From the NCBI RefSeq assembly GCF_000150275.1, contig NW_002060948.1:2927183-2991182 (forward strand): a stretch of DNA of 64,000 bases. The letters are read 5' to 3'. The position numbers and the translations under genes are program-made. Below the pieces are notes generated by a model. The model worked only from the letters and a program-made list of their open reading frames with translations. It was not told the origin of the DNA and made no database searches. The DNA is from Trichoplax adhaerens. Lineage: Eukaryota > Animalia > Placozoa. Positions 60 through 61,866 of the stretch are shown here, in pieces (the first letter of the stretch is position 1; the number at the start of each line of letters is the position of its first letter).

Positions 60-1946
60 ATATTAGGAATCTACACTTAAGTATTTTATAAACACAATAA
101 AAATAAGACTGGGCTATAATGCTAGTTTTTGAAGAGTGATAGTACATATAGAGTAAAGTAATAAAAATTGAGCTATGTTAAGCAAATACCATCGTTAAAG
201 ATATTGATAGGCCTTGCAATAAAGAAGAGAAACCAGCCGCGAAAATTTGTGATTACAATTACTCGTGTCGTAATGAAAACTTTCCTTTCCATACTATGGG
301 CTGTTAGATAAACTGTGGTTAAGTTAATATCTTTAACCTGTATTAATTTTTCTGTGATCATGCTATAAGTAGAAATAATTACGACATAAGCTGCTATGCT
401 AGTTATATTCATTATTAAAAGTACATTTTCTTTAAATTTGTGGTAAAGGTATCAATGGAATATAGACTACCGTACAGATATCAGAAACATTGAACTGCGT
501 TCTAAAGTTTGAAGCCTGTTATATGGACCGAATTGACAATTATCAGTTATTTTCATGTCGATTATCGGTGATTTCCCTTAATATTTAATAGGATATGCTC
601 AAGATCTCTTACTACAGAAAGTGGCTCTCAGTTAAAAATCTATTTGTTAAGATTGGTACCAAGATTCTTGAACTAAAAATTTTTACTATATATAGCGTAT
701 CGCAGCAATTATAACAGCGTAGTATTCATGAAGAGATAGTAAAACATAGTTAAACATATTAATTTCAGCTCAATTTTTATTGTATTTATAATGAAAAGGT
801 GCACTGTTTGACATTACGAGAAAATTGAATTTAGAACTAAGCTCGTATCTGTTATTCTCCCTTGTTTACATTAATCTTGGATAGTCGTAGCCGCATAAAG
901 ACTCCTAAGAATGATTCACGGTAATATTTTCCTTCTGACAGTTTCTGATCTACATTGGTTTTAACTTATCTTTTTATATTGAAATTAAGTTGTCAATACA
1001 ATTTTGAAATTAATTATTGGATATGATGGGAGAAAGCAAATGTATGAGAAAATAGAGGATAATCAAATTTTAATATCATCCTAAAAGCTTCCAAGTTAAA
1101 TAGGATACTTCTACAGCATGCGTATTAATAATTTTGCAGTTAATCTTAATTTCGTAAATTATTATTACTGCTAATAGTTTATTAATGCAATATTGAAAAC
1201 TGAAATGAAAAGCATATCTTGTAATAATAAGAAATAATATATTTATTTTCTTTGTTGCATCATTTAAATTGTATGCAATNNNNNNNNNNNNNNNNNNNNN
1301 NNNNNNNNNNNNNNNNNNNNNNNNNNNNNTCTCTTAGTTGTATACGAAGCTTATACTTCTTGTATATACTTAAGAATAAAGTACTCATAAAATAATAAAC
1401 GTATCTCTAGTCACTTATAGTATTTGTGTGATAGTAGTTAGTCTATCCAGAGTACCTCTCTAGGTAGTGAGAGTAAAATAAGTGGCTAGTGAAATAGTTT
1501 AGTCAATCACAAATTGAAGATTTGTGACACTGAGTAATAGATATGATATGAAGAAATCTTACAAAATAGAAACCTGAATCATCTAGCCATTTCGAAAATA
1601 TTTGAATTGGTACAGCAAAGCCAACATTTGAAGTCGACGTATTTGATGGTGTTACAATAACGAAGCGATAGTGAATATCTGATCCTGCCAAAATAATTAA
1701 ATAACAAGAATCCAGTAAATCGCTTATCGCTTGATTAAAGATAAATATTACGAAAGTTTTCCCTCGCATAGGATTTAGCGATGGTCTTTGAGAACGATAA
1801 GAGTATATATTTGCACTGCTAATGTTCCCTAATTTCAGAAAAGTCAAGGTACTATGAAGAACATAGCAGTTTCCAGCGACCTCGGTCAGTCCAAAAACCC
1901 AGGATAAGATAATAATTGGATAACTATCAAATAAGATCGATACCAT
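60..1946 (-). pseudogene. Cluster GPCR pseudogene: 5' part 1530-1946 cut in TM3 by an LTR; degenerate 3' part at about 60-530
   Basis: ORF 1503..1946 reads MVSILFDSY...NQAISDLLDSCYLIILAGSD...WLDDSGFYFVRFLHIISITQ and then enters LTR sequence. ORF 173..412 has HSMERKVFITT...TNFRGWF, paralogous to 5061..6107. An N gap separates the halves, so they could belong to two loci. Confidence 0.85.
1330..1529 (+). mobile_element. 3' end of an LTR inserted in GPCR TM3 (5' part lost in N gap)
   Basis: Ends TTTGTGACA at 1529, like LTR family A. AATAAA motifs near 1375-1399. Terminal hairpin TCACAAAT...ATTTGTGA. GPCR homology stops exactly at this junction. Confidence 0.65.
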
Positions 1947-3804
1947 TTTAACTGATCAATCGGATAGAATCAAGTCCTGCTATGACTATGGATTAGAAAA
2001 TTATTCAACCTAAGAAATTTCGAAAAATTAATTTCTTATCAAGCGATTAAGTTCTTATAAATGGATTTGATTGCAGTTTCGATGTAATGACTAGAAAATA
2101 ATGGAAGGCTCTATAGCTTTAACGTTGAAAAATATGTGCGATAAAATATTGGCAGCCTGTATATCGAATTTTATTTCGATGTTAGAAATAGAGAATTACA
2201 ATGAAAAATCGTGGTATTAAAAATCGCTAAAACTAAATGTACCCGTACAAAAACTGTATAAGGTCGTACTTATAGTACAGTATTCATAACGGACTAATGG
2301 GATTTAATAGAACATATAATTTTATTGCTGTAATAATTACACCAGTACGGTATGGCAGTCTTTCAGTATTGACAGAATGCAAAATTTAAAATAATTAATT
2401 AGTGACTATTATTAGCTGTCTATTTTTTAATTTAAGATAAATTTGAGACAACTCCAGGGCAGTTCTATTAGTAGCCGGTATAGTAGTGATTTAATGCCTT
2501 ATTCTGCCAAGTGTAAATTTATATTTCATTTTATTCAATTTTATATAAAAGAATTTTTAAGGCGATAGTACATATCGCTAGTCAGAGAAAATAAGGAGTA
2601 AAATTATGAGAAAATAGAATGCAATCGAGTACAGAGATGGATATATTTGAAACTTAAGTTAAATGTATACTAATTATAAATTCTACAAATAAGCTTCGTT
2701 AAATGAACTATTATGACTATCGAGCTGTTAAAGCCATTAATTATTTAATGCATTTATATTTTTAAATACTATAGATGTACTTTGTCACTATTAGAAATAA
2801 GTTCGTTAAGAAACAGTAAATTATACCTAACTTTTCGTATAATAATGTGTAACATATTTGTTAATCATCACATTAATTTACATTAATTTACAGTGAGATT
2901 CATCTGTAACTGAGGATTCAATTATTATTAAGTATTCCGCAAGAATCAAGCCACTTTTCATGTTAACTTTTAGGGAGAGGGTATTACTATTCAAAATTAT
3001 GAAAGGGAGAAATGCAGAGAGAGAAGGATATAAATTCTTCCAGAATCCGCATGAACGAATCGGCAACAATGACTGTATTTCTCTAAAATAATAATACTGC
3101 GTTACAGTTATTGTTACAGTACCAATTTTTTTATTTATAACGATACAGAATTTGTATAGTAAAGTCTAACAGCAATATCCGAGCTTACTTTGCCATTTAA
3201 GTCCTATCAGCAGTAATGCATCTTATACTCTTTCTGATTAAGATGCTGTAAGGATTTATGATCGGGAATTGCTATGATTACAATATGCCTGTATAGTACC
3301 AGTAGTCAACACCAAAATCAAGGCTCATTTCTGAGCAGTAATTTAATAAGATGCTCGTGTAACATCATTTGTTAATCGAAAACTGCGGTACCATATATAC
3401 TACCAGCGACATTATGCATATTAAACATAATTGTATCATTTTTTCATCTTAAAGACTGGTATAAATCTGTACTATAATTTTTTATTAAATAAGAACGGAA
3501 ATAATATTATCGAAGCATAGTTTTGATTAAAAAATGAAGTTCGAGAGATAGTGTAGGTTTAGTACCGTACATATAGAAAGTCAGGAAAAGATTCATTAAA
3601 CTATAGTATACAACTATCAACAAAGTTCGGATGAATAAAGCATATCATAGATCTGAGTAACTCTGTACATAATAGAAGCAATTTATTTATAGTTTTCATT
3701 AGATTATCTTTCTTAAAATTTACCTATGATGGCTTTGGCTATCATATTTTACTTATTGCTTAGATAATTATCTGCTTTGTTTGCGGTATCGCTTCTAAAA
3801 GGGC

Positions 3805-4332
3805 TGTTACAAATCTCTTTGTAACTAGAAAACAGGTCTTAAATACTTTCTTCACTAGTATTTGTGTTCCCAACTAAGTAAGGGACCTATCGTAGTTGAA
3901 CTAACTCTCAGCTACACAAATAAGCTACCAATGAGTAATAGGTTTAAATACTTCACTTCATTTTCGTTAATCTTAGTCGTGAAATGTACTATAGAAAAAC
4001 GTAAGAATATTCTTAGCAATAATAGTCCGAGCACTAGCTTTTTATAGTCTCGGCCAACGCCGATGGGGCACTGTTAGCGGTAACGATAGCGTCTGTTTTT
4101 TGGTATGCTCTCAGTCAACTGAAGCGAGATCGTTAGTTAAGCTTCCACGTGAATATCTACCTTTATTCTGATTTCTCACCACCTTATATACTGTACAATA
4201 CATTACCTTTACTGATCTAGTACGGAACAGAACTAGTGCCGTTAAGCTCTGATAAGGTTGCAATACAACCGATATGAATACAATACAAGAAATCCTATAA
4301 TTAGATACAGAGACGCTAGTAAATCCGTAACA
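3805..4332 (-). mobile_element. Solo LTR (528 bp)
   Basis: Perfect TGTTAC...GTAACA ends. Minus-strand CTATAAAAAGC near 4038-4048. Terminal hairpin GTTACAAA/TTTGTAAC. Flanks share only GGC, so the TSD is imperfect. Confidence 0.6.
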
Positions 4333-5060: not shown

Positions 5061-6107
5061 TTAACGAACGCTAGATCTGACGTTAAGAATGGATATTTGT
5101 TTTTTACGAGTAGACATTACAAATATAATTGGATTAATACTGCAATTTGCCTGAAGTATAACGTTAAATATGGCAGAAATTATGATAAATTGGCTCTTAC
5201 CAAATATGTTTGTGTAATTAAAGACTGAAATAAGCCCTGTAATAAATGCAGGGAACCAAGTGATAAAATTTGTTATTGCGATCACAATTGCCGTAGTAAA
5301 AACTCTTTTTTCCATTTTATGATCTGTTAAAGTAACTTTGTTTATATCAGTGGCTGCACTTATGCGTCTGATTTTTACTGCAATCATGCCATACATACAT
5401 ATGGCCATAATATAGATTATAGAACCAGTCATGATCATTGTCGATAAGTATACTTTCTCACTGTTGTTGAAGGCAATATCAATAGTGCATAAATTACGAA
5501 TTTGATATAGTTGAATTATATTTAAGCCGAATGTACGATACAAATATGCAAAATAATCCCCTAATATAGCGAGTACCATAGATGCCAACCAAGAAATTAG
5601 AACAGATATTATCGCATATTTTGATGTTATTCGTAAAGTCGTAGAAAATGGAAATACAATGCGAAAAAATCGATCAATGGCAATTAAACCCATTAAACAT
5701 ATCGATATAGTAATAGATGTAATGTGAAGGAATCTTGCTAAATAACAAGCTGGGTCATCTAACCACCTTGAATATACTAGAACAGTGAGAGGATTGCTAA
5801 TATTTGATAGTGTGATCTTGACAAATCGATAGCGAATATCTGATATCGCTACGATTATTAGATGACCTGAACCCAGTAAATCACCTATTGCCAGGTTAAA
5901 GATTAATATTACAAACGTTCTTCCTCGTGCACGATTTAACGCTCTCCCTTGAGGACGACGGATTGACAATTTCGTGTTAACTGTATTACCGATTTTCCGA
6001 AAAGAAAACACACTATAGAGAACGTAAGAATTTCCAACGATTCCAGCTATCCCGGCTACCCATAATATGATAATAATCAGATAATTGTCGAACAAGATTG
6101 ATGACAT
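5061..6107 (-). CDS. Intronless rhodopsin-class GPCR, LGR-like 7TM without ectodomain (348 aa)
   Basis: Seven hydrophobic segments; TM1 GN, TM2 NLAIGD, TM3 IDRF, ECL1 WLDDPAC, ECL2 RNLC, TM6 TNFITWFP, TM7 NCSINPIIF. Confidence 0.95.
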   Translation of the reverse strand: MSSILFDNYLIIIILWVAGIAGIVGNSYVLYSVFSFRKIGNTVNTKLSIRRPQGRALNRARGRTFVILIFNLAIGDLLGSGHLIIVAISDIRYRFVKITLSNISNPLTVLVYSRWLDDPACYLARFLHITSITISICLMGLIAIDRFFRIVFPFSTTLRITSKYAIISVLISWLASMVLAILGDYFAYLYRTFGLNIIQLYQIRNLCTIDIAFNNSEKVYLSTMIMTGSIIYIMAICMYGMIAVKIRRISAATDINKVTLTDHKMEKRVFTTAIVIAITNFITWFPAFITGLISVFNYTNIFGKSQFIIISAIFNVILQANCSINPIIFVMSTRKKQISILNVRSSVR

Positions 6108-14055: not shown

Positions 14056-15072
14056 TTAGCAAATAGAGAATTTTTTACGTGAAGATATTATAAAAATAAT
14101 TGGATTAATAATACATTTAGTTTGATGAAGCAAATATATTATGGCAATAACGTCTTGAAAAAGTATATTATCCACTAGAAATTGATAATTACAAAATACA
14201 ATTAATCCCACCGCGAAGGCTGGGAACCAAGTAATAAAATTGACAAATCCGATAGTATACGCTAGATATACAGCTTTTTTTGGTAATTTAGCTCGTGAAT
14301 GATAAATTGTTCTAAGTCTCCTATCGGGGCCGTAATGAAATTTGCACGCAATAATAATATATGTGCATATAATTATAACATGGGATATTAAGCCAAGGAC
14401 TATCATGGATAAGAAGAATGATCGAACCGAGGAATTATTGATATCATCAATGTAGCACAAGTTATGATAGCGATAAGTGTACCTACTGGGAGGAGGTAAC
14501 AGAGTTTTGGCCGCTATAATATTGCAAGTTATAGCTAATACTATGCTGGCATTCCAGGAAATTACAGATTGAATCACTGCTCTCTTAGGAGTAATATGAT
14601 TATGGTTAGAAAAGGGCCGCATAACTAGCATGTATCTTTCGGTTGCAATTAATACTGTTAAAGTGGTTGATTCGCTTATGGAAAGAATCAGCAAAGACCT
14701 TGCCACATAGCAAGTTGGATGATATGGCCAAGCGATGTCAACAGGAGTGGAATTGGAAATAGAATTTGAGGTATTAGCAACTTCTAGGTTATCTAATCTA
14801 GAATAGAGATCAGAGCTTCCCATAAGCAATAAATATAATGAGCCAAACAAATCAGAAATTGCCAAATTAATCATAAAAATCAGAAAAGTTTGATGCTTTA
14901 TAGGATTGCGTATGCTATATACCATAGGGGATGAAATTGTAGATACGGCTTTCAATCTTTGGATTTGAGCTTTCGCTGTAATGAGCGCAATGATATTAGC
15001 TAGCGTCCCAATTATGCCGAATGTCCAAGCTATACCTAAGGCGACATAATTACTATTAAATATTGATGCCAT
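14056..15072 (-). CDS. Intronless LGR-like 7TM GPCR (338 aa)
   Basis: MASIFNSNY, NLAISD, WPYHPTC, ERY, YHNLC, NFITWFP, INPIIF. Confidence 0.95.
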   Translation of the reverse strand: MASIFNSNYVALGIAWTFGIIGTLANIIALITAKAQIQRLKAVSTISSPMVYSIRNPIKHQTFLIFMINLAISDLFGSLYLLLMGSSDLYSRLDNLEVANTSNSISNSTPVDIAWPYHPTCYVARSLLILSISESTTLTVLIATERYMLVMRPFSNHNHITPKRAVIQSVISWNASIVLAITCNIIAAKTLLPPPSRYTYRYHNLCYIDDINNSSVRSFFLSMIVLGLISHVIIICTYIIIACKFHYGPDRRLRTIYHSRAKLPKKAVYLAYTIGFVNFITWFPAFAVGLIVFCNYQFLVDNILFQDVIAIIYLLHQTKCIINPIIFIISSRKKFSIC

Positions 15073-20112: not shown

Positions 20113-21358
20113 ATCAAGACCATTTTCGGTGTTGATGATACAGGTAGAGTCTGTTATGAGATCGTGATAGGTATACAATAGGATTAACAATGCAATTAAT
20201 CTGGGTCAATAAAATAAATGACGGGGCAATTATCTGCTAGACTTTGTTGTTGTTGAAGTCTCGCTCTTTAATGAAAGTAGTAAAACTACAGCAAAACTTG
20301 GAAACAATGGCATTTTAGTGTATTTGCACCCTTAATGTAATCTACCCTTAAATATAGACATATCTACGGTCTGTTTACTCTACATTCAAATATGGCTTGC
20401 TGCATTTAGCTATTACAGTCCTCACAATTTTCTACAATCATCTGCAATTCTGTAAGCTGTTATGGAATATGTTATATCTAATTCTACAATCCTCTTCTCT
20501 GAATGTGCTCTAATTCAATAGCTATAAATACCGGAATTTTCTACCCTAGAATTATTAGTGCCTTAGTATTCCACACGCTACTTCACGACAGTTTGCATGC
20601 TGATCTACGCTACCTCTCACACTGTACCTTAATTTCTATCTCTACAATAAAGTAATCTCTTTGCTTAAACTTCTTGTACAATATTCTGTATGGCGACTAA
20701 ACACGCATCATCTGACGGATCGAACCCTCCATCACTGTCATGAAATTAGTAAATCCAATAATAATTGCTGTCTATAATAGTATTGTATCTATTCTAAGAT
20801 TAGTAGCTCTCGATGTCCTCAAAGAAGCATTATTCCTATTTTTTTCTTATGTAACATAATATAGACGTGTAAAAATATATAAGCGCAGTATAGACAATTA
20901 CTTCAATTATAGCCGAAATTAATGGTAAGGTTTTAACGTATTGATAACGTACATTATTTGTTGTAAACATGTTGCAATATCGATAATTTCGATTAAGATA
21001 CGATGATATCGTTCAGTTAGCCGCAATACTAGCCACAACAGCTGAAAATAAACTACAGATCCAAGATATTAAGGAAATGATAATGACGCTTCTCGACAAT
21101 ACGAGTGTATGTAATGCTTCAGAAAATGAATCCCACTTTTTATACGTAAAGATCGATCCAGTGCAATGATATAAGTAATTATGGCTGATTCATAAACGTT
21201 TTTTACCAGTACCATTTGTAACATGTCCGGACGAATTTCTAGGAAAGACACCAATGGTCTTCCATTTAGGTATTGTCGGAAAAAAGGACTAAAACATTAC
21301 TGAAGACTTCAATAACACCAGCTATATTAAGGAAATTGTCATAGAGTATTGGCGGCAT
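20113..21358 (-). pseudogene. Cryptic cluster GPCR pseudogene split in TM6 by an LTR
   Basis: ATG at 21358 gives MPPILYDNF...SNVLVLF. TM3 SAIITYIIALDR; ECL2/TM5 RYCNMFTTNN...FYTSIL; TM6 IIGFTNFMT|LTR|LFPSFAV; TM7 QINCIVNPIVY. The TM2-ECL1 region is deleted. Confidence 0.85.
20313..20735 (+). mobile_element. Solo LTR family C inside GPCR TM6
   Basis: Reverse-complement homolog of 60374-60836; CTATAAATA TATA near 20522; AATAAA near 20646; TSD TGGCA/TGTCA. Confidence 0.85.
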
Positions 21359-24804: not shown

Positions 24805-25827
24805 TTAACGTAGCTTTCGGCAAGTTATAGACTTACCGTAAATTGACAATAAAAATATGACTGGATTGATACAGCAGTTACTTTGTAGGAATAACACAAA
24901 GATTATAACCAAGCTATAAAAATAATCATTAAATTCTGCGAATGTAAAGTCAAAATAGCTAGAAATGCCAACAGCATAGGTAGGCAACATAGCTACAAGA
25001 TTGGTAAAACTTAAGATAACAGCTATAAATAACACTTTGTATTCATATTGAGGATCACAGTATTTGACTCTAGATGTAAATATTCTATTTCTAGCTGATC
25101 GCAATTTACACAAGATCATAATATAGAAAAACATTACCAAACTATACATCGTTCCACCAGAAGTAGACATGATCAATAGTAGAAATCTAGCTGACCAATG
25201 CCTTAGATAGTTAATAATACACACATTATGATAACGATAGCTTAAACGATATGGCGGCAAGGTGGTATTATAAGCAATAATATTACCTGTAATACCTAAT
25301 ACTATACTTGATAGCCAAGTTATTGATATAGCTATTGTAACAGCCTTGATAGACACAGGTGAGACACCAGAAAATGGATAAAACAAACGTATAAATCGAT
25401 CGCTAGCAATAATTACCGTTATACAAGTTGATGTATGAATTGAAAGTATGTATAGAAATCTTCCAATATAGCAAAATGGATCATTTATCCAAGCTTCATA
25501 GACCATACTAGAATTAAGAAAATTTCCGAAATGTTTAGATACCGTTAGTGGGATAGATCGATAGTGTAAATCTGCTGCGGCTATAATTAGCAGATAAAAC
25601 GATCCCAAAGTATCCGAAATAGCTAAATTAACAATAAGAATATAAAATATTCGATATCTAGACGACAAGATTTTACGATGTCGAATTGATTTTGTCACAG
25701 CATTCGCTTTTGGATTGAGGACACGAATGACTTTAACAAGAACCACAGGATTGGCGATCAGCCCAATAATGCTAAATAACCAGGTAATAGCTAGAGCAGC
25801 GTAATTGTTATAAAGTAAAGAAGCCAT
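24805..25827 (-). CDS. Intronless LGR-like 7TM GPCR (340 aa)
   Basis: MASLLYNNY, NLAISD, WINDPFC, SDRF, YHNVC, TNLVAMLP, NCCINPVIF. Confidence 0.95.
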   Translation of the reverse strand: MASLLYNNYAALAITWLFSIIGLIANPVVLVKVIRVLNPKANAVTKSIRHRKILSSRYRIFYILIVNLAISDTLGSFYLLIIAAADLHYRSIPLTVSKHFGNFLNSSMVYEAWINDPFCYIGRFLYILSIHTSTCITVIIASDRFIRLFYPFSGVSPVSIKAVTIAISITWLSSIVLGITGNIIAYNTTLPPYRLSYRYHNVCIINYLRHWSARFLLLIMSTSGGTMYSLVMFFYIMILCKLRSARNRIFTSRVKYCDPQYEYKVLFIAVILSFTNLVAMLPTYAVGISSYFDFTFAEFNDYFYSLVIIFVLFLQSNCCINPVIFLLSIYGKSITCRKLR

Positions 25828-29281: not shown

Positions 29282-30265
29282 TTATTTTAACTTTCGGCAA
29301 TAATCAATGGATTTTATATAAGCTGTAAGAAAAAGAGTAAAATTAAAGGTGCATGACGAAAGGGATGCTTATATTCAAAAACTTTTATATTAAAGTAAGC
29401 AAAAATGTCGATAGCGTATATAGGGAGTACGGCCAAAAGATTAGTACAACTCATAGCAATGGCAATGGATAATACTTTTCTTTCAAAACGTCGACTTCTA
29501 ACTATTGCTGCTTACGAAGATTCTGTTTCTTATCGAACGTAATTTATATAATATTGCGATATAGAAAACCATTACTAAATTGTACAGTACAATATTAAGC
29601 CGAAAATTGATATGAAAAGTAGCATAAATCTGGCTGACGAATGCTCGAAATAATCAACAATGCATGAATTACGATAATCGTAAGACACCAAATATGGTTT
29701 TAACTTTGTCATAAAAGCAATAACTTCACTTGAAATAGTGATCAGAGTACCAGTAATCCATAACAATGCTATGGATCCTATAGTGATCTTGGTTGATATA
29801 GGTAGAGGTATATAATATGAAAAAAATGTTCGTATAAATCGGCTACCAGTAATAATTACTGTTACATAAGTCGACATGAAGAGCGAAAATATATATAGAA
29901 ATCTGCCGATGTAACAGAATGGATCATTTATTCAGAGTTCGTAGATCACACTCGAATTTAGGAAAACACGTGGATGCAGTAGAGTTATTATTGAGATAAA
30001 TCGATATCATAAGTAGCTACTGCTATAATTAGTAAATATAATGATCCTAAAATATCTGATAAAGATAAATTTAGAATAAGGAAATGAAGCTTTCGATGTT
30101 TCGACGTGCAATTTTGACGATACTAAATTGCCGTTACAGAAGAAATAGCGCTTGACTTTAGAATATGAATAACTTTAATTAGGACGATAGTATTTGCAAT
30201 AATACCAAATGACCAAGTGACCATAATAGCTATATACTGTAATCGTTATATAGTAAAGATATCAT
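29282..30265 (-). pseudogene. Cluster GPCR pseudogene (24805 subfamily)
   Basis: MISLLYNDYSI* start; INDPFCYIGRFLYIFS; GSRF; YRNSC; TNLLAVLP; C-terminal CRKL; multiple stops and frameshifts. Confidence 0.9.
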
Positions 30266-32104: not shown

Positions 32105-32849
32105 TCAATTTAACTTTCGATAACAAATCATCGATTTACTGTAGCCCGTTATTAAAGAGATCATTGGATTGATACAACAGTTAACTTGAAAGAAAAGAAT
32201 CAAAGTGACGACGAGACTACGAAGATGTGGATTATCGCTCAATAAATCTAGTGTTAAAGTAAGCAATGATGCCCATAGCATATGTCGGCAGCATGGCCAA
32301 AAGATTCGTGAAACTGATGGTAATGGCTACTAATAAGACTTTTCTTTATAGCGCCGATTATTATAACTTTTTCGAGTCATTAAAATTCTGTTTCTAATAG
32401 AACGTAATTTATATAATATCGAAATATAAAAACTCGTTGACAAAATATACATAATTCCAGCAAGAAAGTATAATGATAATAAGAGAAGTTTGGCGGACCT
32501 ATCCGTTAAGTGGTTGATAATACACAGATTATGGTAGTTATAAGTTTTGCGGTACTGTTTTTTTTTGTAGTATATGCAATTACATTACTTGCCACAGTAA
32601 ATCCTATGCTAGCAATCCAAGCTAGCGCTATAACTTTTGCGATAGTCTTGGTTGACATAGGCCAATTAGAAGAAAATAGATAAAATGTACGTATAAATCG
32701 ACCTCCAGCGATTATTACGGTGATAGAAGTTGACATGATGGACGAAAGTAGGAATAGAAATCTTCCAATATAGCAAAATGGGTTAGTTATCCAAATTTCA
32801 TAGATCATACTTGAGTTCAAAGAAATTTAGGATCATGGAAGTGTAAGAT
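32105..32849 (-). pseudogene. Cluster GPCR pseudogene (24805 subfamily); 5' end lost at N gap
   Basis: NSSMIYEIWITNPFCYIGRF; GGRF in place of DRF; frameshift at an A9 run (32558-32566) before YNYHNLC; second frameshift near 32340; TNLLAMLP; QVNCCINP. Confidence 0.9.
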
Positions 32850-33161
32850 NNNNNNNNNNNNNNNNNNNNNNNNNNNNNNNNNNNNNNNNNNNNNNNNNNA
32901 TACCTAAAGAATTTCAGGCATTTTGCAAAATGCCGGATTTCGCAAATTGCCGGTAACACATATAATAAAAAGATCCTCTCTATACGTTCGATATTTACTC
33001 CTACTTGGTAAATATTCCTTGATGCGCAGTTTCAACTCCTAATATAAACTACTTCAACAAAGATCAATAAGCCTTTCTAAATTATACTGCAGATTGAGAT
33101 CTTAATCATTACTAGTGTACAGAATGGGTTAGTGGGATATAGATTGTTATCTAATCCATAG

Positions 33162-33370: not shown

Positions 33371-33414
33371 TTTTATCAAATAAATTCCGATATAATAGCA
33401 TTTAAATTAATAAT

Positions 33415-34414
33415 TTAAACATGATTTGCTTTGAGTTAGCAGAAAAATGTACTTGGATTAATTGCGCAATTAATTATAAAGCAAGAATAAGCGGTGGAGA
33501 TACTGTTCGGAATATTTTACTATCGTAAACAATTTCATAGTTAGAAATAATCGCTACCACCAGCGAAAAGCTGGAAGTCACGTTAGAAAGTTGGTACAAC
33601 CAATTATAATTGCTGTAAAAATTGCCTTTCCTTCTACTTCATTCTTAATGGTAGGCGATCGTAATAAAGAGTAATTTTTTCTCATAGTCCGTAAACTACA
33701 CATTACATAAGCGTAGAAATATATTCAAGTAGGATAGATAATTAAGCCTCCTACCGGTACCAGCCATAAAAGTGCTTGAACATGATGATATAAATATTGT
33801 AATATTAATAATTTTTGATAAAAGGTGAAGGTGTGGTTGAGTAAGAGAACGTAGTACCGATGCTAGCTAATATTAGACTAATGATCTAAGTTACCACAAA
33901 AATGATTATAGAATGCTTCTAAGTTACGAGAAATTTTATAGAATAAGGATATTTTACCTGTAAAAATTGATCTGCAGCAATCATGAAGCCAACAGACGTT
34001 GATTCATTAATTGTAGCAATCATCAGATATCTTGCCACATGGAAAAATGGATTATGTAACCGACTAATTTATATCAATGTTGAATTAGTAGTCGAACTGA
34101 CAGAAGATGATACTATGTCTACAAAACGATAACGTGTATCACCTGCAGTAATGATGATCATGTAATATGATTGTAATAAATCTTTAGCAGCCAAATTTAT
34201 TATCAATATTGTGAACATTTTACTACGTATACGGTATATTATCCTTGCTAGATTATGTGGAAGAACTTTATGTAACATAGAGTTAGACTCTTAAATGCTC
34301 GATAATCCAGATATAAGAACTAGAATATTGCTTGTAATTATCGCTCTAATCGGACCAATACTGTAATCCAAACAAGATATGAGCTGAATAGGTTATTAAC
34401 TGTATCGATGCTAA
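33415..34414 (-). pseudogene. Degenerate cluster GPCR pseudogene
   Basis: ORF 34069..34278 has MFTILIINLAAKDLLQSYYMIIITAGDTRYRF; AADQF at the DRY position; TM7 NCAINP near 33455; ATG lost. Confidence 0.85.
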
Positions 34415-39062: not shown

Positions 39063-40090
39063 TCACTTTGTTTTTGCTGAGATCGTAGAAATTAGAAAAA
39101 TTATAGGATTAATAGCGCAGTTAAGCTGCAAGCCTAAACTTAGAATGGGGAGTATAACATCTAAAGCTATGTTCATTCGAGCTTCCATCATTATTGAATG
39201 ATCTATAACAATCATAAATATTACAGCGAGACAAGGAAACCAAAATATAGCATTTGTACATGTAATTATGGCTGCCGTATAGCGTACTTTTTTGCCAGCT
39301 TGTTTATTAATTTTTTTCAATTTTGTCTTTAACCTGATCCCTCTGGAATATTTAATTTTATAAAATATTAAAATGTAGCTACCAATAACTACTATATAAT
39401 TAATTGAACCACCAGTTATTAGTGCTAGAAGCATCAGTTTGACGCTGATGTAACTCATATTATCGGCTGTGCATAAATTATGATAATGATGAACAACAGC
39501 AATCTGTGATGGAAACGTTATGTAAGGCACAATGTTACCAACTGTACCTATAGCCGCACTAATTATCCATACAATCATTAACGCTGGAATCAGGCGTTTA
39601 GATGTAAAATACAAAGTAGAAAGATGCGGATAGACAATACTGAAAAGCCGATCTAAAGCCATTATATTCGTGATCATGCCCGTTGCTGAAACTGCAGTAA
39701 ATGTCAAAAATCTTGCAATATAGCAGAAAGGACTGCGTTGCCAAGTTACAAAAATTTCGCTTGAGTTTAATACAATTGTAAAGTTACCATTATTGTAAGA
39801 GATTTCATTAGCTTTAAATCGATATCGTAAATCAGCAACTGCAATGATAATCAAATAGCATGAACCCAAAAAATCCGATATAGCCAAGTTTCGTATTAGT
39901 AAATAAAATTTTTATTACCACGAAATATCAAAGATTTGTGAATATTTATCATTTTAGTGAAAATCTTAGGTGAGCGATTACCTTGTTTGGATGCTCGTAG
40001 AATTACTAATATATTGCAAATTAAGCCAGTTAGTCCACAACTCCACGCCAGACACATAGCTGCAATATTATCACGCAAAATAGATGCCAT
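39063..40090 (-). CDS. LGR-like 7TM GPCR with a single -1 frameshift near 39905-39913 (342 aa if restored): very young pseudogene or sequencing error
   Basis: ORFs 39896..40090 (MASILRDN...TM1) and 39063..39887 (TM2-TM7) join as F-Y-LLIRNLAISD with one added base in AAAAATTTT; no other lesion seen. Confidence 0.8.
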
Positions 40091-44000: not shown

Positions 44001-45017
44001 TTAACTTTTTCTCATTGATAAAAGAAAAACTAGAGGATTAATACTACAATTAATCTGTATGCTTAAACTTGCTACTATCATAGCTATTTTAAATGCCCCA
44101 TTAGTATATAGCAAGTAAAATCTTAGAGTTGCAAGTAAAGATATAGCTAAGGAAGGAATCCAAGCAGCTAGATTTGAGAAGACTATTGCAGCGGTAATAA
44201 TTAGAACTTTTTTCGCAATTCTTTGATCAATACGACTAGATTTCGGTAATTTACTCGTATTTTTGCTACATCGTATTTTGTATGCTATAGCTATATAACA
44301 GCATGCTGCAGCTCCATACGCTCCTACACCGGCCAGGACTAGTCCGGTGAGAAAAATTCTAATATATTCATTTTCTATATTATCCAAAGTACATAAATTG
44401 TGATAAAAATAATTTGTAAATTGGTCCTTCAAATTTAATGTAATATAAGCAAAGACACTACCAATCACAGCTGAACAGATGCCACAAGCCCACGATGAAT
44501 AAATCAAAATCTGAAGACGCTTGGTTCTTAAACGCAAAGTCATGCTGTTTGAAGTGAATACACTTATAAATCGATCGACGGCTATTAAAACTGTTAGACA
44601 TGTCGTAGCGCCAACAGAAAAGAAGTTAAAAAATCTTGCAATATAACAAGGTGGACTATGCATCCATGTAGCATAAATTAATGTATAATTAAATGTGGAT
44701 GAAACATTGGAACTATAGTCACCCAGATTCAGAAATCGATAGTGTATATCCGCTCCAGCAATAATCAATAAGTAAATGCAGCCTATGAGATCAGATATTG
44801 CTAAATTAAAAATTAATTTAAGAAATATTGAACTTCTAGATGAGTTTTTCACCCTACCAGTGGGATACTTTCGAATAAGCTTACTCATGATTTTAGAGGA
44901 CCTTTTTCCAACCTTAAAAATTTTGATGATTACAGATATATTACCAATGGTTCCAATAATACCACAAACCCAAACTAGAGTAATGACGGTAGTATTATTA
45001 TACAGGATAGACGCCAT
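44001..45017 (-). CDS. Intronless LGR-like 7TM GPCR (338 aa)
   Basis: MASILYNN, NLAISD, WMHSPPC, VDRF, YHNLC, SNLAAWIP, NCSINPLVF. Confidence 0.95.
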   Translation of the reverse strand: MASILYNNTTVITLVWVCGIIGTIGNISVIIKIFKVGKRSSKIMSKLIRKYPTGRVKNSSRSSIFLKLIFNLAISDLIGCIYLLIIAGADIHYRFLNLGDYSSNVSSTFNYTLIYATWMHSPPCYIARFFNFFSVGATTCLTVLIAVDRFISVFTSNSMTLRLRTKRLQILIYSSWACGICSAVIGSVFAYITLNLKDQFTNYFYHNLCTLDNIENEYIRIFLTGLVLAGVGAYGAAACCYIAIAYKIRCSKNTSKLPKSSRIDQRIAKKVLIITAAIVFSNLAAWIPSLAISLLATLRFYLLYTNGAFKIAMIVASLSIQINCSINPLVFLLSMRKS

Positions 45018-46409: not shown

Positions 46410-47379
46410 TGTTAATAGAAAATTTAATATACTGATTTGTAAATATGAAATCCCTTTAAACGTTTTTGATTAATTTTACAGGCTAAAACTTCTAGCAGAA
46501 TAGTCTTCTAAATCAGGGCAAAACTTTCGTACGCCATTGGATTTGAGCTAATAGTATTGACGGTACGACATAAAATTTTTTCTCGCAGTTTTCTAATCAA
46601 TTTGGCCAGCTCTTGGTAATAGCGTTCTATTTTTGATACGTGGTATTTTACAAGCTATAGCTATATAAAAACATGCTGTAATGCAATAGTTTATTGAACC
46701 TGTGAAGACTTGTATGATGAGAAATAATCTAATCTGCTCATTCCTTATATTGTCTAGGGTGAAAAGGCTATATTCTGTATTTTGGCACTGCAATAGTAGC
46801 ATAATGTGAGCAAAGATAATCTCAAGCACGGCTGAGCAAATATTACCACTCCACACTATAAAAATAAAAAATCTTAAGACACATGCCATTTAAAGCCCAA
46901 AGTCAGATTAGCTGTATAGATTGTACTTAAAATCGATCGACAGAGATTAAAGTTATTAAACCTATCGTAGTGAGGATAAAAAGGAAAGTAAAAAATCTTT
47001 TAATGTAACAAGCTTAACTACAGATCCATACAGCATAAATTACGGTACAATTAAATCTTAATCTAAAATTAGAGCTATGGTCGCTAAAAATCATAATCGA
47101 TATTATAAACTTGCTCCAGCGATATTTAATAAATTTAAACCCATCCTATGAAATCAGATAAAGCAAAATTAAAGAGTAATATAAGAAATATTTGACTGCC
47201 TAATAAATTCTTTATTCAGCGACTTTTGCCGCTTTTAAAAGATTTATCCATGGTTTAAATGAGCTCCTTCTAACCTTGGAAGTTTCAAGCAACACCTAGA
47301 CGTTAGCAATCGTTGCAATAACACCAACGATCCAAGCTAGAGTAATAATGAGGATATCATTATACAGCATAGGCGTCAT
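46410..47379 (-). pseudogene. Cluster GPCR pseudogene (44001 subfamily)
   Basis: MTPMLYNDILIITLAWIVGVIATIANV* start; VDRF; TLDNIRNEQIRLFL...FYIAIACKI; TM7 homology ends at SIN, next to an LTR-like TGTGAC. Confidence 0.88.
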
Positions 47380-48501: not shown

Positions 48502-48558
48502 GGGTAGTTATACTGTACAGCTAAAATATAATTGCACAACAGAACGATCTAACTTATA

Positions 48559-49596
48559 CTAGCGACGAAAGATTTGTATGTTGTTATGGGTTAATAGTAA
48601 AAGTACTATTGGATTAATACTGGCATTGCTTTGTAAGATTAACGTAATTATTACTATCATAAATTGTAAGTTATTATTCGATTCAATAATCTTACCATTG
48701 GAAACAGTAATAAAAGTTAATGTTAAAGATGGAATCCAGACTAAAAAACTAGTGCAACATATAATAGCGGTTACGAATAAGATTTTTCTTTCAATTCTTT
48801 GGTTGATACCAATAGGCCTAGCCAATACCGATGAAAGACTGGCTTTATTATATCTTAATTTTCTCCATATAGTAAAGTACATGAATAGAATAGAGAAATA
48901 ATTGATAGAGCCAGATAAAGTCAAGGCCAATAGTAATATTTTAACGTGTAGATAACTGAGATTATCAATTGAACATAAATTATGGTAGCGAAAACTTCTG
49001 TTATGAGACATAAAAGGTATTGTCATCGATGCAAAAATATCGGCCACGGAAGCAGTTATCATACTGCATAGCAACGATATGGTAGATAAGCGAATAGCAC
49101 GTTTCGCAGTTAAACGTAAATTTGGAGAAAATGGATAAATTACGTTTAGAAATCGGTCCAATGCGATGAACCAAGTAATCATGGTCGAATGACTTACCGA
49201 TGTAATATTAATAAATCTTGCTGCATAACAACCTACGTTATTTAGCCACATAAAATAAATCACTGTATCATTTGTGGAAGAACTGGTAACGTTATTATGA
49301 TCTGTGCAAATGAACCGATATCTCACATCAGCAACAGCGAGAATAAGTAAATATATTGAACCGATAAAATCAGCTATAGCTAAATTAATAACAAGAATGC
49401 CAAACGTTTGATTCTTAGCAGTCGGCCTTGCTCTAGAAACAGCTGTTGCTGTTAATACATGAACACGAACAGCACTGGCTGTTTTACGATATTTTATAGC
49501 TTTAAAAAAGATCAAACCATTCGCTAAGAATCCAATGATACCAAGAATCCATACCATAGCAATAATAGCAATTTCATTGTAAAGGATTGAAGTCAT
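48559..49596 (-). CDS. Intronless LGR-like 7TM GPCR (345 aa from the conserved ATG)
   Basis: ORF-track start at 49665 is TTG; the family start MTSILYN is the ATG at 49596. NLAIAD, WLNNVGC, LDRF, YHNLC, TSFLVWIP, NASINPIVL. Confidence 0.95.
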   Translation of the reverse strand: MTSILYNEIAIIAMVWILGIIGFLANGLIFFKAIKYRKTASAVRVHVLTATAVSRARPTAKNQTFGILVINLAIADFIGSIYLLILAVADVRYRFICTDHNNVTSSSTNDTVIYFMWLNNVGCYAARFINITSVSHSTMITWFIALDRFLNVIYPFSPNLRLTAKRAIRLSTISLLCSMITASVADIFASMTIPFMSHNRSFRYHNLCSIDNLSYLHVKILLLALTLSGSINYFSILFMYFTIWRKLRYNKASLSSVLARPIGINQRIERKILFVTAIICCTSFLVWIPSLTLTFITVSNGKIIESNNNLQFMIVIITLILQSNASINPIVLLLLTHNNIQIFRR

Positions 49597-54298: not shown

Positions 54299-55303
54299 TC
54301 ATAACCAATTAGATGTCGACAACCAGAATATGATCGGATTAATAATGCAATTTGCTTGAAATATGAATATTAGAGTAGAAGTAACGTCAAAAACTAATTT
54401 AACTTTTAATATTCCATTGTAATACGTAAAGGCTGCTACTCCTACCCCAATTGCAGGAAACCAAACCAAAAAATTAGTTAGGCTGATGAAAATAGCTAAC
54501 CGAATTAATTTCCTTTGGATAGGACTTGGATAATAAAAGCGAACCTCACTATTTCTTCGATATTGTATAAGCTTATAAATAATTAAAATATACATGGATA
54601 CTATGTACAGGTATAAGATGAAGGCTACAATTGCTATAGTAAATACATGAATACGGATAAAATAGATGCCAATATTATCATAAGTACACAAATTGTAGAA
54701 ATGAAATCGCATATCGAAGGATTGATTTTCGGTTATATATGCATAGATACTAAACATAATAGTTATACTAGCACTGGTAAACCATCCAATAATGACTAAC
54801 ATAACTGTTCGTTTCGGTGTAAATCGCTTGTTAGAATGTGGATAAGCAACATTCAGATATCGATCTGTAGCTATTAATGTGGTTACAAAAATGGATTGCA
54901 GACTGGCTAATATGTTACAACATCGTGCAAGATAGCATACCGGGCTACGCTGCCAGTAGACATGGACATAACTGGAATTATAATATATTGATTCATTTGA
55001 CCAAGCAGAATATACCACGTTTCGATGATATAATTCTGCTACTCCAATAGTGATGAGATAGATGGCTCCTAAAAGGTCGGAAATGGCTAAATTGAGTAGT
55101 AGAATTTTAAATGTTCGACTTTTAAATATCATTGCCAGTCTCGACGATTGACTAGATATGGATCTTGCGAATATTCTGCGATTTACTTTCTGATTGTGTA
55201 TCGCAATAGCGAAAATAATACTGATATTGCCTATAATACCACCTAAACCAACCACCCAAGATGTACTGATGGCTACATAATTATTGTATAAAAGCGATGC
55301 CAT
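54299..55303 (-). CDS. Intronless LGR-like 7TM GPCR (334 aa)
   Basis: MASLLYNNY, NLAISD, WQRSPVC, TDRY, FYNLC, TNFLVWFP, NCIINPIIF. Confidence 0.95.
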   Translation of the reverse strand: MASLLYNNYVAISTSWVVGLGGIIGNISIIFAIAIHNQKVNRRIFARSISSQSSRLAMIFKSRTFKILLLNLAISDLLGAIYLITIGVAELYHRNVVYSAWSNESIYYNSSYVHVYWQRSPVCYLARCCNILASLQSIFVTTLIATDRYLNVAYPHSNKRFTPKRTVMLVIIGWFTSASITIMFSIYAYITENQSFDMRFHFYNLCTYDNIGIYFIRIHVFTIAIVAFILYLYIVSMYILIIYKLIQYRRNSEVRFYYPSPIQRKLIRLAIFISLTNFLVWFPAIGVGVAAFTYYNGILKVKLVFDVTSTLIFIFQANCIINPIIFWLSTSNWL

Positions 55304-58831: not shown

Positions 58832-59954
58832 ACATGATATTACTAGCTTAAAGAACAATTGATAATCAATGATGACTGAAGATAGTGAATAACGGTAAAT
58901 GTTTGTAGATGATATTACTTCGAAATAATTTAAAATGTAGATAATAGTCTTTAGAAATTATACAGTCATCGATGATGAAAATAGAAATTTGAATATTGCT
59001 TTACAATCGAAATAAAATTAGCGACTAATTTTGTTATGCTACAAGTTATTATTACTTTTATAATAAGGGTATATCGTTGACAAAGTTATTAAAACCGAAA
59101 ATTTATTATAAGCCAATTCCAGTCCTTTCCTAATCATTAATTTTTTAAAGGCAACTCTGCAGTCTTTGCTTTTCCCTATGTATTATTACTTCGCTGGAAT
59201 ACTTGACATAACAAGACAATAATCGCTTTCTCTCTCCAAATTCTTAAATTCGAGTTATATAAAGGTAGTCACAGATTCAAAAGATAATACGAATGTATGA
59301 GCCATACAAACTGAAATTACTTTCTAGTCAAGAGTTTTGATAAAAGAAATTAAAAAATCAATAACCAAATATATAAGAATATCGTTTCACATAGCATGAT
59401 TCGCTAAACTGAAAGCACTACACTGAAACTATATCATGCCTAAAAAGTTTAGCTATTAAAACGTACCATAATACAGCAATATTTGATACAAATCCTTCCC
59501 AAAATCAACTTGATCTTCTCCTAAAATGACTAGATGGTATACTTTGCAATAATTTTATTTACTTAAGATTTGATTTTAATAATGCAATTACAGGCTTTAA
59601 AAATGGAAGCTACCTGAGTTTATTGTAGATAGTAACTCATGCAAACGAATTTACCAATTTCTTTAGCAGAAAACTTTCAATCCATAATAAGCCCAATTCA
59701 ATAGTTTTCTTACCAGTAGACGCATAAATAAACTAATAAAGCCATCGCCTAATTTGATAGAGTACGAACATCAACTAATAAGTATCTGCACTTGTAGATA
59801 TCATTGGAAAGAATAGTATTAAGATAGCTTCGTACCCCTTGAAAATTACCTGAACAGATCTATGCTGGTAATTAGTTATTTGAAATGAAATGATACAACT
59901 GCTACGCGATAATGTTTATAGTTACGAAGATAAATATCAAAATTCTTATTACAG

Positions 59955-60373: not shown

Positions 60374-60836
60374 TGTGATGGAGGGTTTGATATCTCAGAG
60401 GATTGAGATTTAGTCGCCATTTACAATTACTACAACAAAGGGTTTATAAAAGTTATGCTTTATTGTAGGTTAGTAATGTGAAGTACAGCGAGGCAGTTAC
60501 GGTAGATCAGCGTGCAAGCTGTCGTGAGTAACGAGTAGAAGTATCAGACTGTGAGAGACTAACTAGAAGACTAACTGAGAGGCTAACGAACTCTGAGATA
60601 GAAATCACCGGTATTTATAGTTTTAAAGATAGAGCACATGCAGAGAATAGGATTGTGGAATTAGATACGACATATACCATAACAGGTTACAAAATAGCAG
60701 ATGGTTGTAGAAAACAACGAGTACCGTAATAACTATATACAGTAGTCTATATATGAATGTAGAGTAAGCGGACTGTAGATCTGTCTAAATATAAGAGCAA
60801 TACAGCATGTTATATTAAGAGTAGAATATAGTTACA
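60374..60836 (-). mobile_element. Solo LTR family C
   Basis: Minus strand TGTAAC...CATCACA; homolog of 20313-20735; flanks CCTAC/GTATA do not match. Confidence 0.85.
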
Positions 60837-60847
60837 GTATATTCTAA

Positions 60848-61866
60848 ATACACTACACCTACATAATATACTTCGCCATTGGAGTGTCTTGAATACTAAG
60901 TTTAAGTGGTATTTTGGGAAATTTATATGTCGTTTTCTTTATCGTATCCTACTTTAACAAATCTAAAAGGATGCTCATATTCAAAAAGCAGTCAAGTTCT
61001 AAATTAAAGATAAACTCAATCATTAGGAATCGACAATTTATTGTTCTCCTATTAAACTTAGCTTGTTCTGATATTTTAGGAGCGACATACTTTCTAATTA
61101 TCGCTTACGCTGATTTACATTATCGGATTGAACCATCTGCTCATAATAACGCTACAATTCGAAATGGTAATAATACATTTACCTTTTGGCTGTGTAGCCC
61201 ATTCTGCTATATCACCAGAGGTTGCAATATAATTGCTACATTTCAATCAATCTATCTTATAATACTCATTGCTATAGATAGATATCTTAAAATAACTCAT
61301 CCTTTTTCGGCTAAAGCAATACTGACAATAAAACGCCTTTCAATACTAATCGTCAAAGGCTAGTTCATTACATTTCTTATAGCTGGCGTATTTAACCTTT
61401 ATGCGTATTTACTATTCCAAGATATTTGACATCTTACTCATATTATTATAACTTATGTGGTTACGATAGTATTGGCACTTATTTATGTTCGTTTAAGCCT
61501 GTTTATCATGTCATTTAGCAGCTCCCCATTTTATCTAGCTATTCTAGTTATTTATACATTAAACTTTCATAAATTACAACGGATTCGAATGAACCTAATT
61601 ATAAACAGAAGAAGCAACTTTATTGAAAGGAAGGTACTAAAATTCGCTATCTTTATTAGATTACGTAATTTTCTTATCTGGTTTCCAGCTATTTCTGCAG
61701 CTATCACCACTTTCATTTACTACGAAAGTGCTTTAAGTGAATCAACCTTTTGCATATTTGCCACAACGTTATTTTTAAAGCAAATCCTGCAATTAATCCC
61801 CTTATATTTTTAATTATGATATCAGGCTGGTTTATTCTCGTTCCAAGGCTGTTTATTGGCGGATAG
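60848..61866 (+). pseudogene. Inverted cluster GPCR pseudogene (54299 subfamily)
   Basis: YFAIGVS*ILSLSGILGN; NLACSDILGATYFLIIAYAD; WLCSPFC; IDRY; TM4 Trp codon is TAG; NFLIWFP; ANPAINPLIF; ATG lost. Confidence 0.9.

What the first reader, a model, noticed from the sequence alone, without database searches (positions are those of the whole stretch)
60..61866. Tandem array of ~16 ectodomain-less, intronless LGR-like GPCRs: a candidate lineage-specific chemoreceptor repertoire
Seen: 6 intact, 1 frameshifted and about 9 pseudogenised paralogs in 64 kb. Each has a single coding exon of ~1 kb, 15 of 16 are co-oriented, they diverge strongly, and related copies are neighbours (1.9/6.1/11.0 kb; 25.8/30.3/32.8 kb; 45.0/47.4 kb; 55.3/60.9 kb). 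Known: tandem, intronless, pseudogene-rich, short-N-terminus GPCR arrays are typical of olfactory, V1R and T2R chemoreceptors, while the TM2/ECL1/TM6/TM7 motifs here resemble LGR/RXFP/GRL101 receptors. Inference: an independently evolved sensory receptor family derived from an LGR-type 7TM domain.
Basis: partly seen in the sequence, partly recalled or inferred. Interest (0 to 1): 0.85.

Follow-up and report, generated by a model that had tools for sequence, protein, structure and literature searches.

The report
Placozoan ectodomain-less LGR-type receptor array
This stretch of the Trichoplax genome is a row of short, single-exon G-protein-coupled receptor genes, over half of them broken; their membrane core descends from the hormone-receptor (LGR) lineage but has no outer hormone-binding domain, and what they sense is still unknown.

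Summary
The window (Trichoplax adhaerens-type genome, C1409:2927183-2991182) carries 16 rhodopsin-class GPCR loci, 15 on the minus strand: 6 intact single-exon ORFs (334-348 aa), 1 with a single frameshift, and 9 pseudogenes or fragments. No intact ORF touches an assembly gap. The cluster runs on outside the window: 19 loci in about 81 kb, 10 of them broken.

- An exhaustive HMMER search ranks LRR/LDLa-bearing GRL101-type receptors directly after the short family.
- RXFP1 is the best solved sequence match.
- FSHR and TSHR are the best fold matches.
- An ML tree puts the family inside an LGR superclade (100/100) against 15 canonical class A receptors of the same genome.

The ML position, sister to placozoan-specific LRR-GPCRs (84/99), implies ectodomain loss. 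A position outside all LGRs is not rejected (AU p 0.22).

No LRR exon lies within 124 kb. The family has about 55 loci in this genome.

The chemoreceptor reading is untested. The RNA data were uninformative, each intact gene except 44001-45017 has a close counterpart (42-66% identity) in unnamed assemblies, and variability is not concentrated in the ligand pocket.

The scan has already reported the same family on other DNA (s1-788046). Papers describe placozoan-specific GPCR expansions in general, but none I found describes this family.

The parts
194..388 (-). receptor fragment (like residues 232-297 of the 5061-6107 protein)
   Evidence: tblastn 46% identity, E 5e-9
1509..1955 (-). N-terminal half of a copy, cut by the gap at 1280-1329; full-length with 3 stops on the allelic contig C1341
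1280..1329 (.). assembly gap; the allelic contig has about 2.8 kb here
5061..6107 (-). intact single-exon receptor gene, 348 aa
   Evidence: ORF, 7tm_1 74.7 bits, 100% identical H2 protein P0005
9974..10975 (-). pseudogene, 12 in-frame stops
14056..15072 (-). intact single-exon receptor gene, 338 aa
   Evidence: the allele on C1341 is 95% identical in protein, allelic dN/dS 0.38
20845..21093 (-). weak receptor fragment, 1 stop
   Evidence: tblastn E 4e-4
24805..25827 (-). intact single-exon receptor gene, 340 aa
   Evidence: the allele on C1194 is 99% identical
29356..30239 (-). pseudogene: frameshift and 7 stops
32123..32826 (-). pseudogene: frameshift, 2 stops, N-terminus cut by the gap
32850..32899 (.). 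assembly gap
33397..34248 (-). pseudogene in three frames, 7 stops
39063..40090 (-). copy with one frameshift in the first intracellular loop; otherwise open
   Evidence: the H2 model P0010 is N-terminally shortened
44001..45017 (-). intact single-exon receptor gene, 338 aa; modelled by AlphaFold2
   Evidence: 99% to the H2 'GRL101-like' protein; pLDDT 88.6
46566..47379 (-). pseudogene: frameshift and 6 stops
48559..49596 (-). intact single-exon receptor gene, 345 aa from the ATG
54299..55303 (-). intact single-exon receptor gene, 334 aa
58060..58322 (.). assembly gap in intergenic DNA, no receptor homology beside it
60869..61783 (+). the only plus-strand copy; pseudogene with 3 stops

Best explanation
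The window holds 16 of the 19 loci of an 81-kb tandem cluster of single-exon class A GPCR genes. They belong to a family known so far only from placozoans, with about 55 loci in this genome. The seven-helix core is of the LGR (GRL101/relaxin-receptor-like) lineage, but the protein begins about ten residues before the first helix.

Shown:
- There is no LRR, LDLa or hinge domain.
- The core keeps N1.50, D2.50, the TM3-ECL2 cysteine pair, DRF, W4.50, WxP in TM6 and NP in TM7.
- It also has a long basic first intracellular loop, F/L instead of Y at 7.53, and only 10-22 residues after NP.
- The duplications are old: paralogues are 30-36% identical.
- More than half of the copies have since decayed.
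- The region is polymorphic enough for its alleles to be assembled as separate contigs.

Inferred:
- The family arose from a placozoan LRR-GPCR by loss of the ectodomain.
- The ligand must therefore act directly on the helix bundle and loops, as small-molecule modulators of FSHR/TSHR do, and the receptor signals through a G protein.
- I think an external or food-derived cue slightly less likely than, or about as likely as, an endogenous secreted peptide. Neither was tested.
For: - 16 loci and their states; 7tm_1 match; conserved residues.
- AF2 model with seven helices, pLDDT 88.6.
- Cluster extent.
- No ectodomain exon in 124 kb.
- Exhaustive HMMER search: about 50 short relatives, then long proteins, of which 42 of 53 carry LRR_8 and 8 carry LDLa. 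The named ones are GRL101 or GRL101-like.
- RXFP1 is the best PDB sequence; FSHR, TSHR and LHCGR fill 7 of the 10 best Foldseek hits.
- Careful IQ-TREE (C20): LGR superclade 100/100, short family 100/100, sister to placozoan LRR-GPCRs 84/99, type A outside.
- The family scores 187-336 bits at about 60 places, above a plateau at 178 bits or less.
- Allelic contigs are 91-98.7% identical; allelic dN/dS is 0.36-0.48.
- H1-H2 orthologues are 97.7-100% identical.
Against: - The AU test does not reject the family lying outside all LRR-bearing LGRs (delta lnL 10.3, p 0.22), so loss of the ectodomain is not proven.
- The margin of RXFP1 over non-LGR receptors is small (50.5 against about 45 bits).
- The family's stem branch is long (0.76), so long-branch effects are possible.
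- The outgroup is 15 receptors of one genome, and type B LGRs were not sampled.
- No transcript evidence was obtained.
- Y7.53 is missing and the C-tail is very short, so signalling may be atypical.
- The language-model search finds generic orphan class A expansions, not LGRs.
Confidence: 0.78

Rival explanations
1. The intact genes are receptors for external chemical cues (food, microbes, conspecifics). This would be a placozoan chemoreceptor repertoire that evolved independently from an LGR-type core.
For: - Tandem single-exon organisation, with 10 of 19 loci broken.
- Strong divergence of paralogues.
- Relaxed allelic dN/dS of 0.36-0.48 on few sites.
- Highly divergent haplotypes and a possible null allele.
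- No ectodomain, so a small ligand in the helix bundle is plausible.
- In Najle et al. 2023 Table S3, two T. adhaerens genes labelled RXFP1-like with only 7tm_1 sit in a lipophil (digestive secretory cell) module. I could not tie them to this family.
Against: - Single-exon tandem arrays are the norm for the roughly 1000 7tm_1 candidates of this genome.
- Family loci elsewhere are mostly intact.
- All intact genes but one have a single close counterpart in other assemblies, so turnover is not fast.
- Variability is not higher in the outer helix halves (p 0.15 and 0.96).
- No shared upstream motif.
- No expression data.
Confidence: 0.35
2. They are receptors for endogenous secreted peptides, part of the paracrine network between placozoan cell types.
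For: - Najle et al. 2023 (PMC10580291) report that placozoan-specific GPCRs are expressed in unique combinations in peptidergic cells and treat them as candidate peptide receptors.
- After RXFP1, the next-best solved sequence matches are peptide receptors: QRFPR, BRS3, NPFF and NPY.
- Counterparts are kept across placozoan-like assemblies.
Against: - A pseudogene share above one half and allele-level disruption are unusual for receptors of conserved peptides.
- Only about a dozen peptide precursors were known against hundreds of receptors (Hauser 2022).
- No link between these loci and any cell type could be made.
Confidence: 0.35
3. The family was never an LGR. It is an ancestrally short class A lineage that is sister to the LGRs, which gained their LRR domain after the split.
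For: The AU test does not reject this tree (p 0.22). The quick and FastTree runs left the position unresolved, or sister to the sampled LRR-GPCRs.
Against: - The careful ML tree nests the family inside, with type A outside (79/86 and 84/99).
- LGRs occur in sponges and ctenophores (Roch and Sherwood 2014), whereas the short family has named members only in Trichoplax. A sister lineage would therefore have to be lost in all other animals.
Confidence: 0.2
4. The cluster is a dying remnant without present function; the open frames are simply not yet broken.
For: 10 of 19 loci are broken, one intact gene may have a null allele, and Y7.53 is lost in this subfamily.
Against: - Nine ORFs of about 340 codons stay open, although their paralogues are only 30-36% identical and therefore old.
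- H1-H2 identity is 97.7-100%, and allelic dN/dS is below 1.
- The key class A residues are conserved.
Confidence: 0.08

Closest known systems
Type C LGRs: GRL101 (Lymnaea) and relaxin receptors RXFP1/2
   Same: The closest named relatives of the seven-helix core in an exhaustive search, with RXFP1 the best solved sequence. Shared TM2-ECL1-TM3 pattern (NLA-SD ... W ... C ... DRF ... PFS), T-D/N-F..W.P in TM6 and N..INP in TM7.
   Different: No LDLa module, LRRs or hinge, so there is no tethered-agonist mechanism. About 340 aa against 750-1100. Single exon. F/L at 7.53. Almost no C-tail. Long basic ICL1.
Placozoan-specific LRR-GPCRs (the 41 'novel' T. adhaerens LGRs of Hauser et al. 2022, PMC9545775)
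   Same: Sister group in the ML tree (84/99); same genome; also expanded in tandem.
   Different: Those carry many LRRs and their own hinge. The array proteins carry none.
Vertebrate OR, V1R and T2R chemoreceptor clusters
   Same: Tandem organisation, single coding exon, short N-terminus, many pseudogenes, divergent paralogues and haplotypes.
   Different: No homology beyond class A membership. No evidence of sensory-cell expression or of one-receptor-per-cell choice. The duplications are old, and all but one of the intact genes has a one-to-one counterpart.
Placozoan-specific class A GPCR expansions (Najle et al. 2023, PMC10580291; Eitel et al. 2018, PMC6067683)
   Same: These loci are part of that known expansion (923 GPCRs in H2; independent duplications between species).
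   Different: Those papers treat the expansion as a whole. I found no description of an LGR-lineage subfamily without an ectodomain, nor of this pseudogene-rich cluster.

Membership tests
Rhodopsin-class (class A) GPCR, Pfam PF00001 | 7tm_1 profile match above the curated cut-off | tested here: met
   49-75 bits against a cut-off of 30.5 for all seven ORFs
Rhodopsin-class (class A) GPCR, Pfam PF00001 | Seven-helix fold with N1.50, D2.50, C3.25-ECL2 cysteine, (D/E)R(Y/F), W4.50, WxP, NP7.50 | tested here: met
   Invariant columns of A1; AF2 model with seven helices, pLDDT 88.6, pTM 0.89
Rhodopsin-class (class A) GPCR, Pfam PF00001 | Tyrosine 7.53 of NPxxY | tested here: not met
   F, L or I in the array subfamily; Y in the wider short family
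LGR (leucine-rich-repeat-containing GPCR) | Leucine-rich-repeat ectodomain | tested here: not met
   Only 7tm_1 in Pfam. The ORFs start about 10 residues before TM1. 54 LGR ectodomains find nothing in 124 kb.
LGR (leucine-rich-repeat-containing GPCR) | Cysteine-rich hinge between the LRRs and TM1 | tested here: not met
   There is no sequence before TM1 that could hold it
LGR (leucine-rich-repeat-containing GPCR) | Seven-helix domain inside the LGR clade | tested here: inconclusive
   LGR superclade 100/100 and ML nesting 84/99, but a position outside all LGRs is not rejected (p-AU 0.22)
GRL101 / type C LGR | LDLa module(s) at the N-terminus | tested here: not met
   No Ldl_recept_a match
Chemoreceptor-type GPCR repertoire (OR/V1R/T2R-like organisation) | Tandem clusters of single-exon genes with a high pseudogene share | tested here: met
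   10 of 19 loci are broken in this cluster. Family loci elsewhere are mostly intact.
Chemoreceptor-type GPCR repertoire (OR/V1R/T2R-like organisation) | Rapid lineage-specific gain and loss, few one-to-one orthologues | tested here: inconclusive
   All intact genes but one pair one-to-one with an unnamed protein at 42-66% identity. The source organisms of those proteins are unknown.
Chemoreceptor-type GPCR repertoire (OR/V1R/T2R-like organisation) | Expression in sensory or exposed cells; response to external chemicals | not testable with these tools
   Only Logan contigs of unclear kind were available. They cover genes, a pseudogene and spacers alike.

The most novel reading that the evidence does not exclude
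Placozoans, animals without neurons, built a chemoreceptor repertoire of their own. They stripped the hormone-binding ectodomain from an LGR and multiplied the bare seven-helix core, so that food or microbial molecules act directly on the site that in mammals is only an allosteric drug pocket of the FSH/TSH receptors. This would be an independent origin of GPCR-based chemoreception from a hormone-receptor ancestor.
Probability: 0.25. Interest if true: 0.75.

Novelty: new variant of a known kind. Interest (0 to 1): 0.5.

Why it matters
LGRs are defined by their large ectodomain, which both binds the hormone and restrains the helix bundle. A family of about 55 natural LGR-lineage receptors with no ectodomain poses a direct test: what activates the bare bundle? 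The candidates are constitutive activity, small molecules and peptides.

If the ligands are external cues, this would be an independent invention of GPCR chemoreception in one of the simplest animals. If they are endogenous peptides, the family adds a defined and tractable block to the placozoan paracrine network that single-cell studies are trying to deorphanise.

The pseudogene-rich, highly polymorphic cluster in this window is the part of the family under the weakest constraint. That makes it a good place to study turnover.

Tried and rejected
- RNA evidence. The look-up of sequencing runs found no holder on record as RNA. The four runs laid down are Logan contigs that lie on genes, on a pseudogene and on spacers alike, so there is no verdict on expression.
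H2 and other-taxon DNA, synteny and orthologue dN/dS could not be obtained.
- Mapping the loci to the Najle et al. single-cell tables failed. There was no match to guessed H2 locus tags, and the files were cut when stored.
- PF12369 (the gonadotropin-receptor hinge) found nothing in the genome. A type A anchor was obtained instead with a short degenerate TM7 pattern recalled from memory. It was verified against PDB, scoring 286 bits to FSHR.
- Type B LGRs could not be sampled. One search returned only type C and GRL101-type receptors.
- Entropy of outer against inner helix halves showed no difference (p 0.15 and 0.96).
- No 8-mer is shared by 5 or more of the 7 upstream regions.
- The word-indexed search with the 51-sequence profile added no named taxa.
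- The ESM Atlas gave only generic orphan class A clusters.
- Rfam, tRNA and tandem-repeat scans found nothing relevant.
- A missed upstream LRR exon was considered and rejected.


Full report
**What is there**

The window is AT-rich (about 30% GC). It is C1409:2927183-2991182 of a 105.6-Mb, 1414-contig assembly. One of its ORFs is 99% identical to a Trichoplax sp. H2 protein that NCBI names 'G-protein coupled receptor GRL101-like', so the genome is of the Trichoplax adhaerens type.

There are seven ORFs of 274-368 aa, all on the minus strand, and each matches Pfam 7tm_1 above its cut-off. tblastn with these ORFs finds 16 loci:
- six intact genes;
- one copy with a single frameshift in the first intracellular loop;
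- six pseudogenes with 2-12 stops, four of them also frameshifted;
- three fragments.

Fifteen loci are on the minus strand. Each broken copy is most like a neighbouring intact gene. There are no other long ORFs, no tRNAs and no Rfam matches; what remains is a few dispersed repeats.

The cluster continues outside the window, with one intact gene 11 kb upstream and two within 5 kb downstream. In all there are 19 loci in about 81 kb, 10 of them broken.

**Gaps and alleles**

Three small contigs are colinear allelic copies of parts of the window, 91-98.7% identical: C1341, C1194 and C893. They let two of the gaps be read.
- At 1280-1329 the other haplotype has about 2.8 kb where the window has 250 bp. 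It carries the copy at 1509-1955 full-length with three stops. The gap hides the rest of a pseudogene.
- At 32850-32899 the other haplotype continues the pseudogene at 32123-32826 towards its N-terminus, with two stops.
- The third gap, 58060-58322, has no receptor homology beside it.

No intact ORF touches a gap.

The alleles of the intact genes differ by 1-5% in protein. Allelic dN/dS is 0.36-0.48, on only 5-13 synonymous changes per gene. The allele of the 5061-6107 gene on C1341 has a 1-bp deletion in a run of six A. This is either a segregating null allele or a sequencing error.

**Architecture**

The ORFs begin with a conserved M-A-S-I-L-Y-N-N about ten residues before TM1. The H2 protein models have the same lengths. 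Fifty-four LGR ectodomains used as tblastn queries find nothing in the window plus 30 kb on either side. The proteins therefore have no ectodomain, and the coding sequence is one exon.

An AlphaFold2 model built on a 51-sequence family alignment has seven helices (pLDDT 88.6, pTM 0.89).

The usual class A residues are present: N1.50, D2.50, the TM3-ECL2 cysteines, DRF, W4.50, WxP and NP7.50. Three features are unusual:
- a basic first intracellular loop of 25-30 residues, which the model draws as an extension of TM1;
- F, L or I in place of Y7.53 in this subfamily, whereas the wider family has Y;
- only 10-22 residues after NP, which leaves essentially no C-terminal tail.

**Relatives**

I ran a profile of the seven proteins against 1.84 billion representative proteins. 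It gives 42 hits below 1e-30 and 585 below 1e-10. The first fifty or so are short (320-380 aa) receptors. After them the list turns to long proteins that match in their C-terminal part. Of 53 such proteins, 42 carry LRR_8, 8 carry LDLa and 3 carry CUB. The named ones are GRL101 or GRL101-like receptors of corals, echinoderms and others, or T. adhaerens LRR-GPCRs.

Against solved structures, RXFP1 is the best sequence match: 50.5 bits and the longest span, against about 45 bits for QRFPR, BRS3 and the beta-1 adrenoceptor. FSHR, TSHR and LHCGR fill 7 of the ten best Foldseek matches of the model.

**Tree**

For a tree I added the following:
- a T. adhaerens type A LGR, found with a short TM7 pattern and confirmed by 286 bits to FSHR;
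- named GRL101 and RXFP2-like receptors;
- placozoan LRR-GPCRs;
- 15 canonical class A receptors of the same genome as outgroup.

The careful IQ-TREE run (LG+C20+F+G4, 108 rows, 311 columns) gives these results:
- an LGR superclade that includes the short family, 100/100;
- the short family itself, 100/100;
- the short family sister to the placozoan-specific LRR-GPCRs, 84/99;
- that pair sister to the type C/GRL101 clade, 79/86;
- type A outside.

This topology means the ectodomain was lost. The best tree with all LRR-bearing lineages held together is only 10.3 log-likelihood units worse, however, and is not rejected (p-AU 0.22). Membership of the LGR lineage is well supported. Nesting within it is the best estimate, not a proven fact.

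**Family size and range**

A 51-sequence profile scores 187-336 bits at about 60 places in this genome, above a plateau at 178 bits or less where the LRR-GPCRs lie. After removing allelic contigs and split matches, that is roughly 55 loci. They lie in clusters on C1401, C1402, C1406, C1409, C1410, C1411, C1413 and C1414.

Few loci outside this cluster show stops, so this cluster is unusually decayed. Degenerate copies are likelier to be missed by that search, which biases the comparison.

Named family members come only from Trichoplax H1 and H2. The others come from unnamed ENA and Logan assemblies.

H1-H2 orthologues are 97.7-100% identical. Each intact window gene except 44001-45017 pairs in the tree with one unnamed protein at 42-66% identity. 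The duplications therefore predate that split. For scale, Eitel et al. give a mean protein distance of 28% between Trichoplax and Hoilungia.

**Function**

Nothing here tests function directly.
- The sequencing runs offered are assembled contigs of unclear kind. They cover genes, a pseudogene and spacers alike.
- I could not link the loci to the published single-cell tables.
- Variability among paralogues is not concentrated in the outer helix halves.
- There is no shared upstream motif.

Without an ectodomain, the ligand must act on the helix bundle or the loops. Whether that ligand is an external cue or a secreted placozoan peptide is open.
- The high pseudogene share, relaxed allelic constraint and divergent haplotypes lean towards an environment-facing repertoire.
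- The reported expression of placozoan-specific GPCRs in peptidergic cells (Najle et al. 2023) and the retention of counterparts lean towards endogenous signalling.
- Single-exon tandem arrays are the rule for the roughly 1000 7tm_1 candidates of this genome, so that trait alone says little.

**Novelty**

Published work reports 679 family A GPCRs and 46 LGRs in T. adhaerens (Hauser et al. 2022). It also reports 923 GPCRs in H2, largely placozoan-specific (Najle et al. 2023), and independent GPCR duplications between placozoan species (Eitel et al. 2018). Database names already say 'GRL101-like' or 'RXFP1-like'.

I found no paper that singles out an LGR-lineage family without an ectodomain, or this cluster. 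The scan itself has already reported the same family on another piece of this genome (s1-788046), and my independent tests agree with that report.

Noticed in passing
G000 contigs C1341 (1-19047), C1194, C893, against window 1-16540, 20960-28423 and 30368-32848: Three small contigs are colinear allelic copies of the cluster, 91-98.7% identical. The region is divergent enough between haplotypes to have been assembled twice, so whole-genome counts of this family include duplicates.
   Followed up: yes
window 5061-6107, against C1341:10343-11385: The allele on C1341 of this intact gene has a 1-bp deletion in an A6 run at CDS position 797, which shifts the frame. It is either a segregating null allele or a Sanger error.
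   Followed up: partly
proteins P0221, P0233, P0240, P0261 (corals) and P0179, P0185, P0211 (hemichordates): The precomputed Pfam domains of these GRL101-like receptors include Pkinase or PK_Tyr_Ser-Thr next to 7tm_1, mostly with LRRs as well. The LGR-with-kinase-tail design that earlier scan notes report for Trichoplax also seems to exist in cnidarians and hemichordates.
   Followed up: no
window 48307-48501: A short stretch just downstream of the 48559-49596 gene has much higher contig depth in all four runs and loose ends on both sides. It behaves like a dispersed repeat or an abundant element.
   Followed up: no
window 44192-44290 and 44345-44449: In run X5, one contig (depth 4.5) skips 97 and 103 bases with GT..AG ends on the plus strand, inside the minus-strand gene 44001-45017. 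This may be a spliced antisense transcript or a deleted variant.
   Followed up: no
window 27868-28167, 37121-37420, 38490-38789; 9143-9408 and 58567-58832; 8024-8331 and 16408-16715 (inverted): Dispersed repeats of 270-310 nt, 64-92% alike, lie between the receptor genes. They probably derive from transposable elements and may be substrates for unequal crossing-over.
   Followed up: no
L043:70-1605 (G000:C1414:4793080-4794615, plus strand): A single open exon encodes the hinge and seven-helix part of a true type A glycoprotein-hormone-type receptor: 286 bits to human FSHR and 275 to TSHR.
   Followed up: partly
Najle et al. 2023 Table S3 (PMC10580291, supplementary file 3): T. adhaerens genes TriadG33357 and TriadG15610, labelled relaxin_family_peptide_receptor_1 with only a 7tm_1 domain, belong to a lipophil-cell gene module. 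I could not establish whether they are members of this short family.
   Followed up: partly
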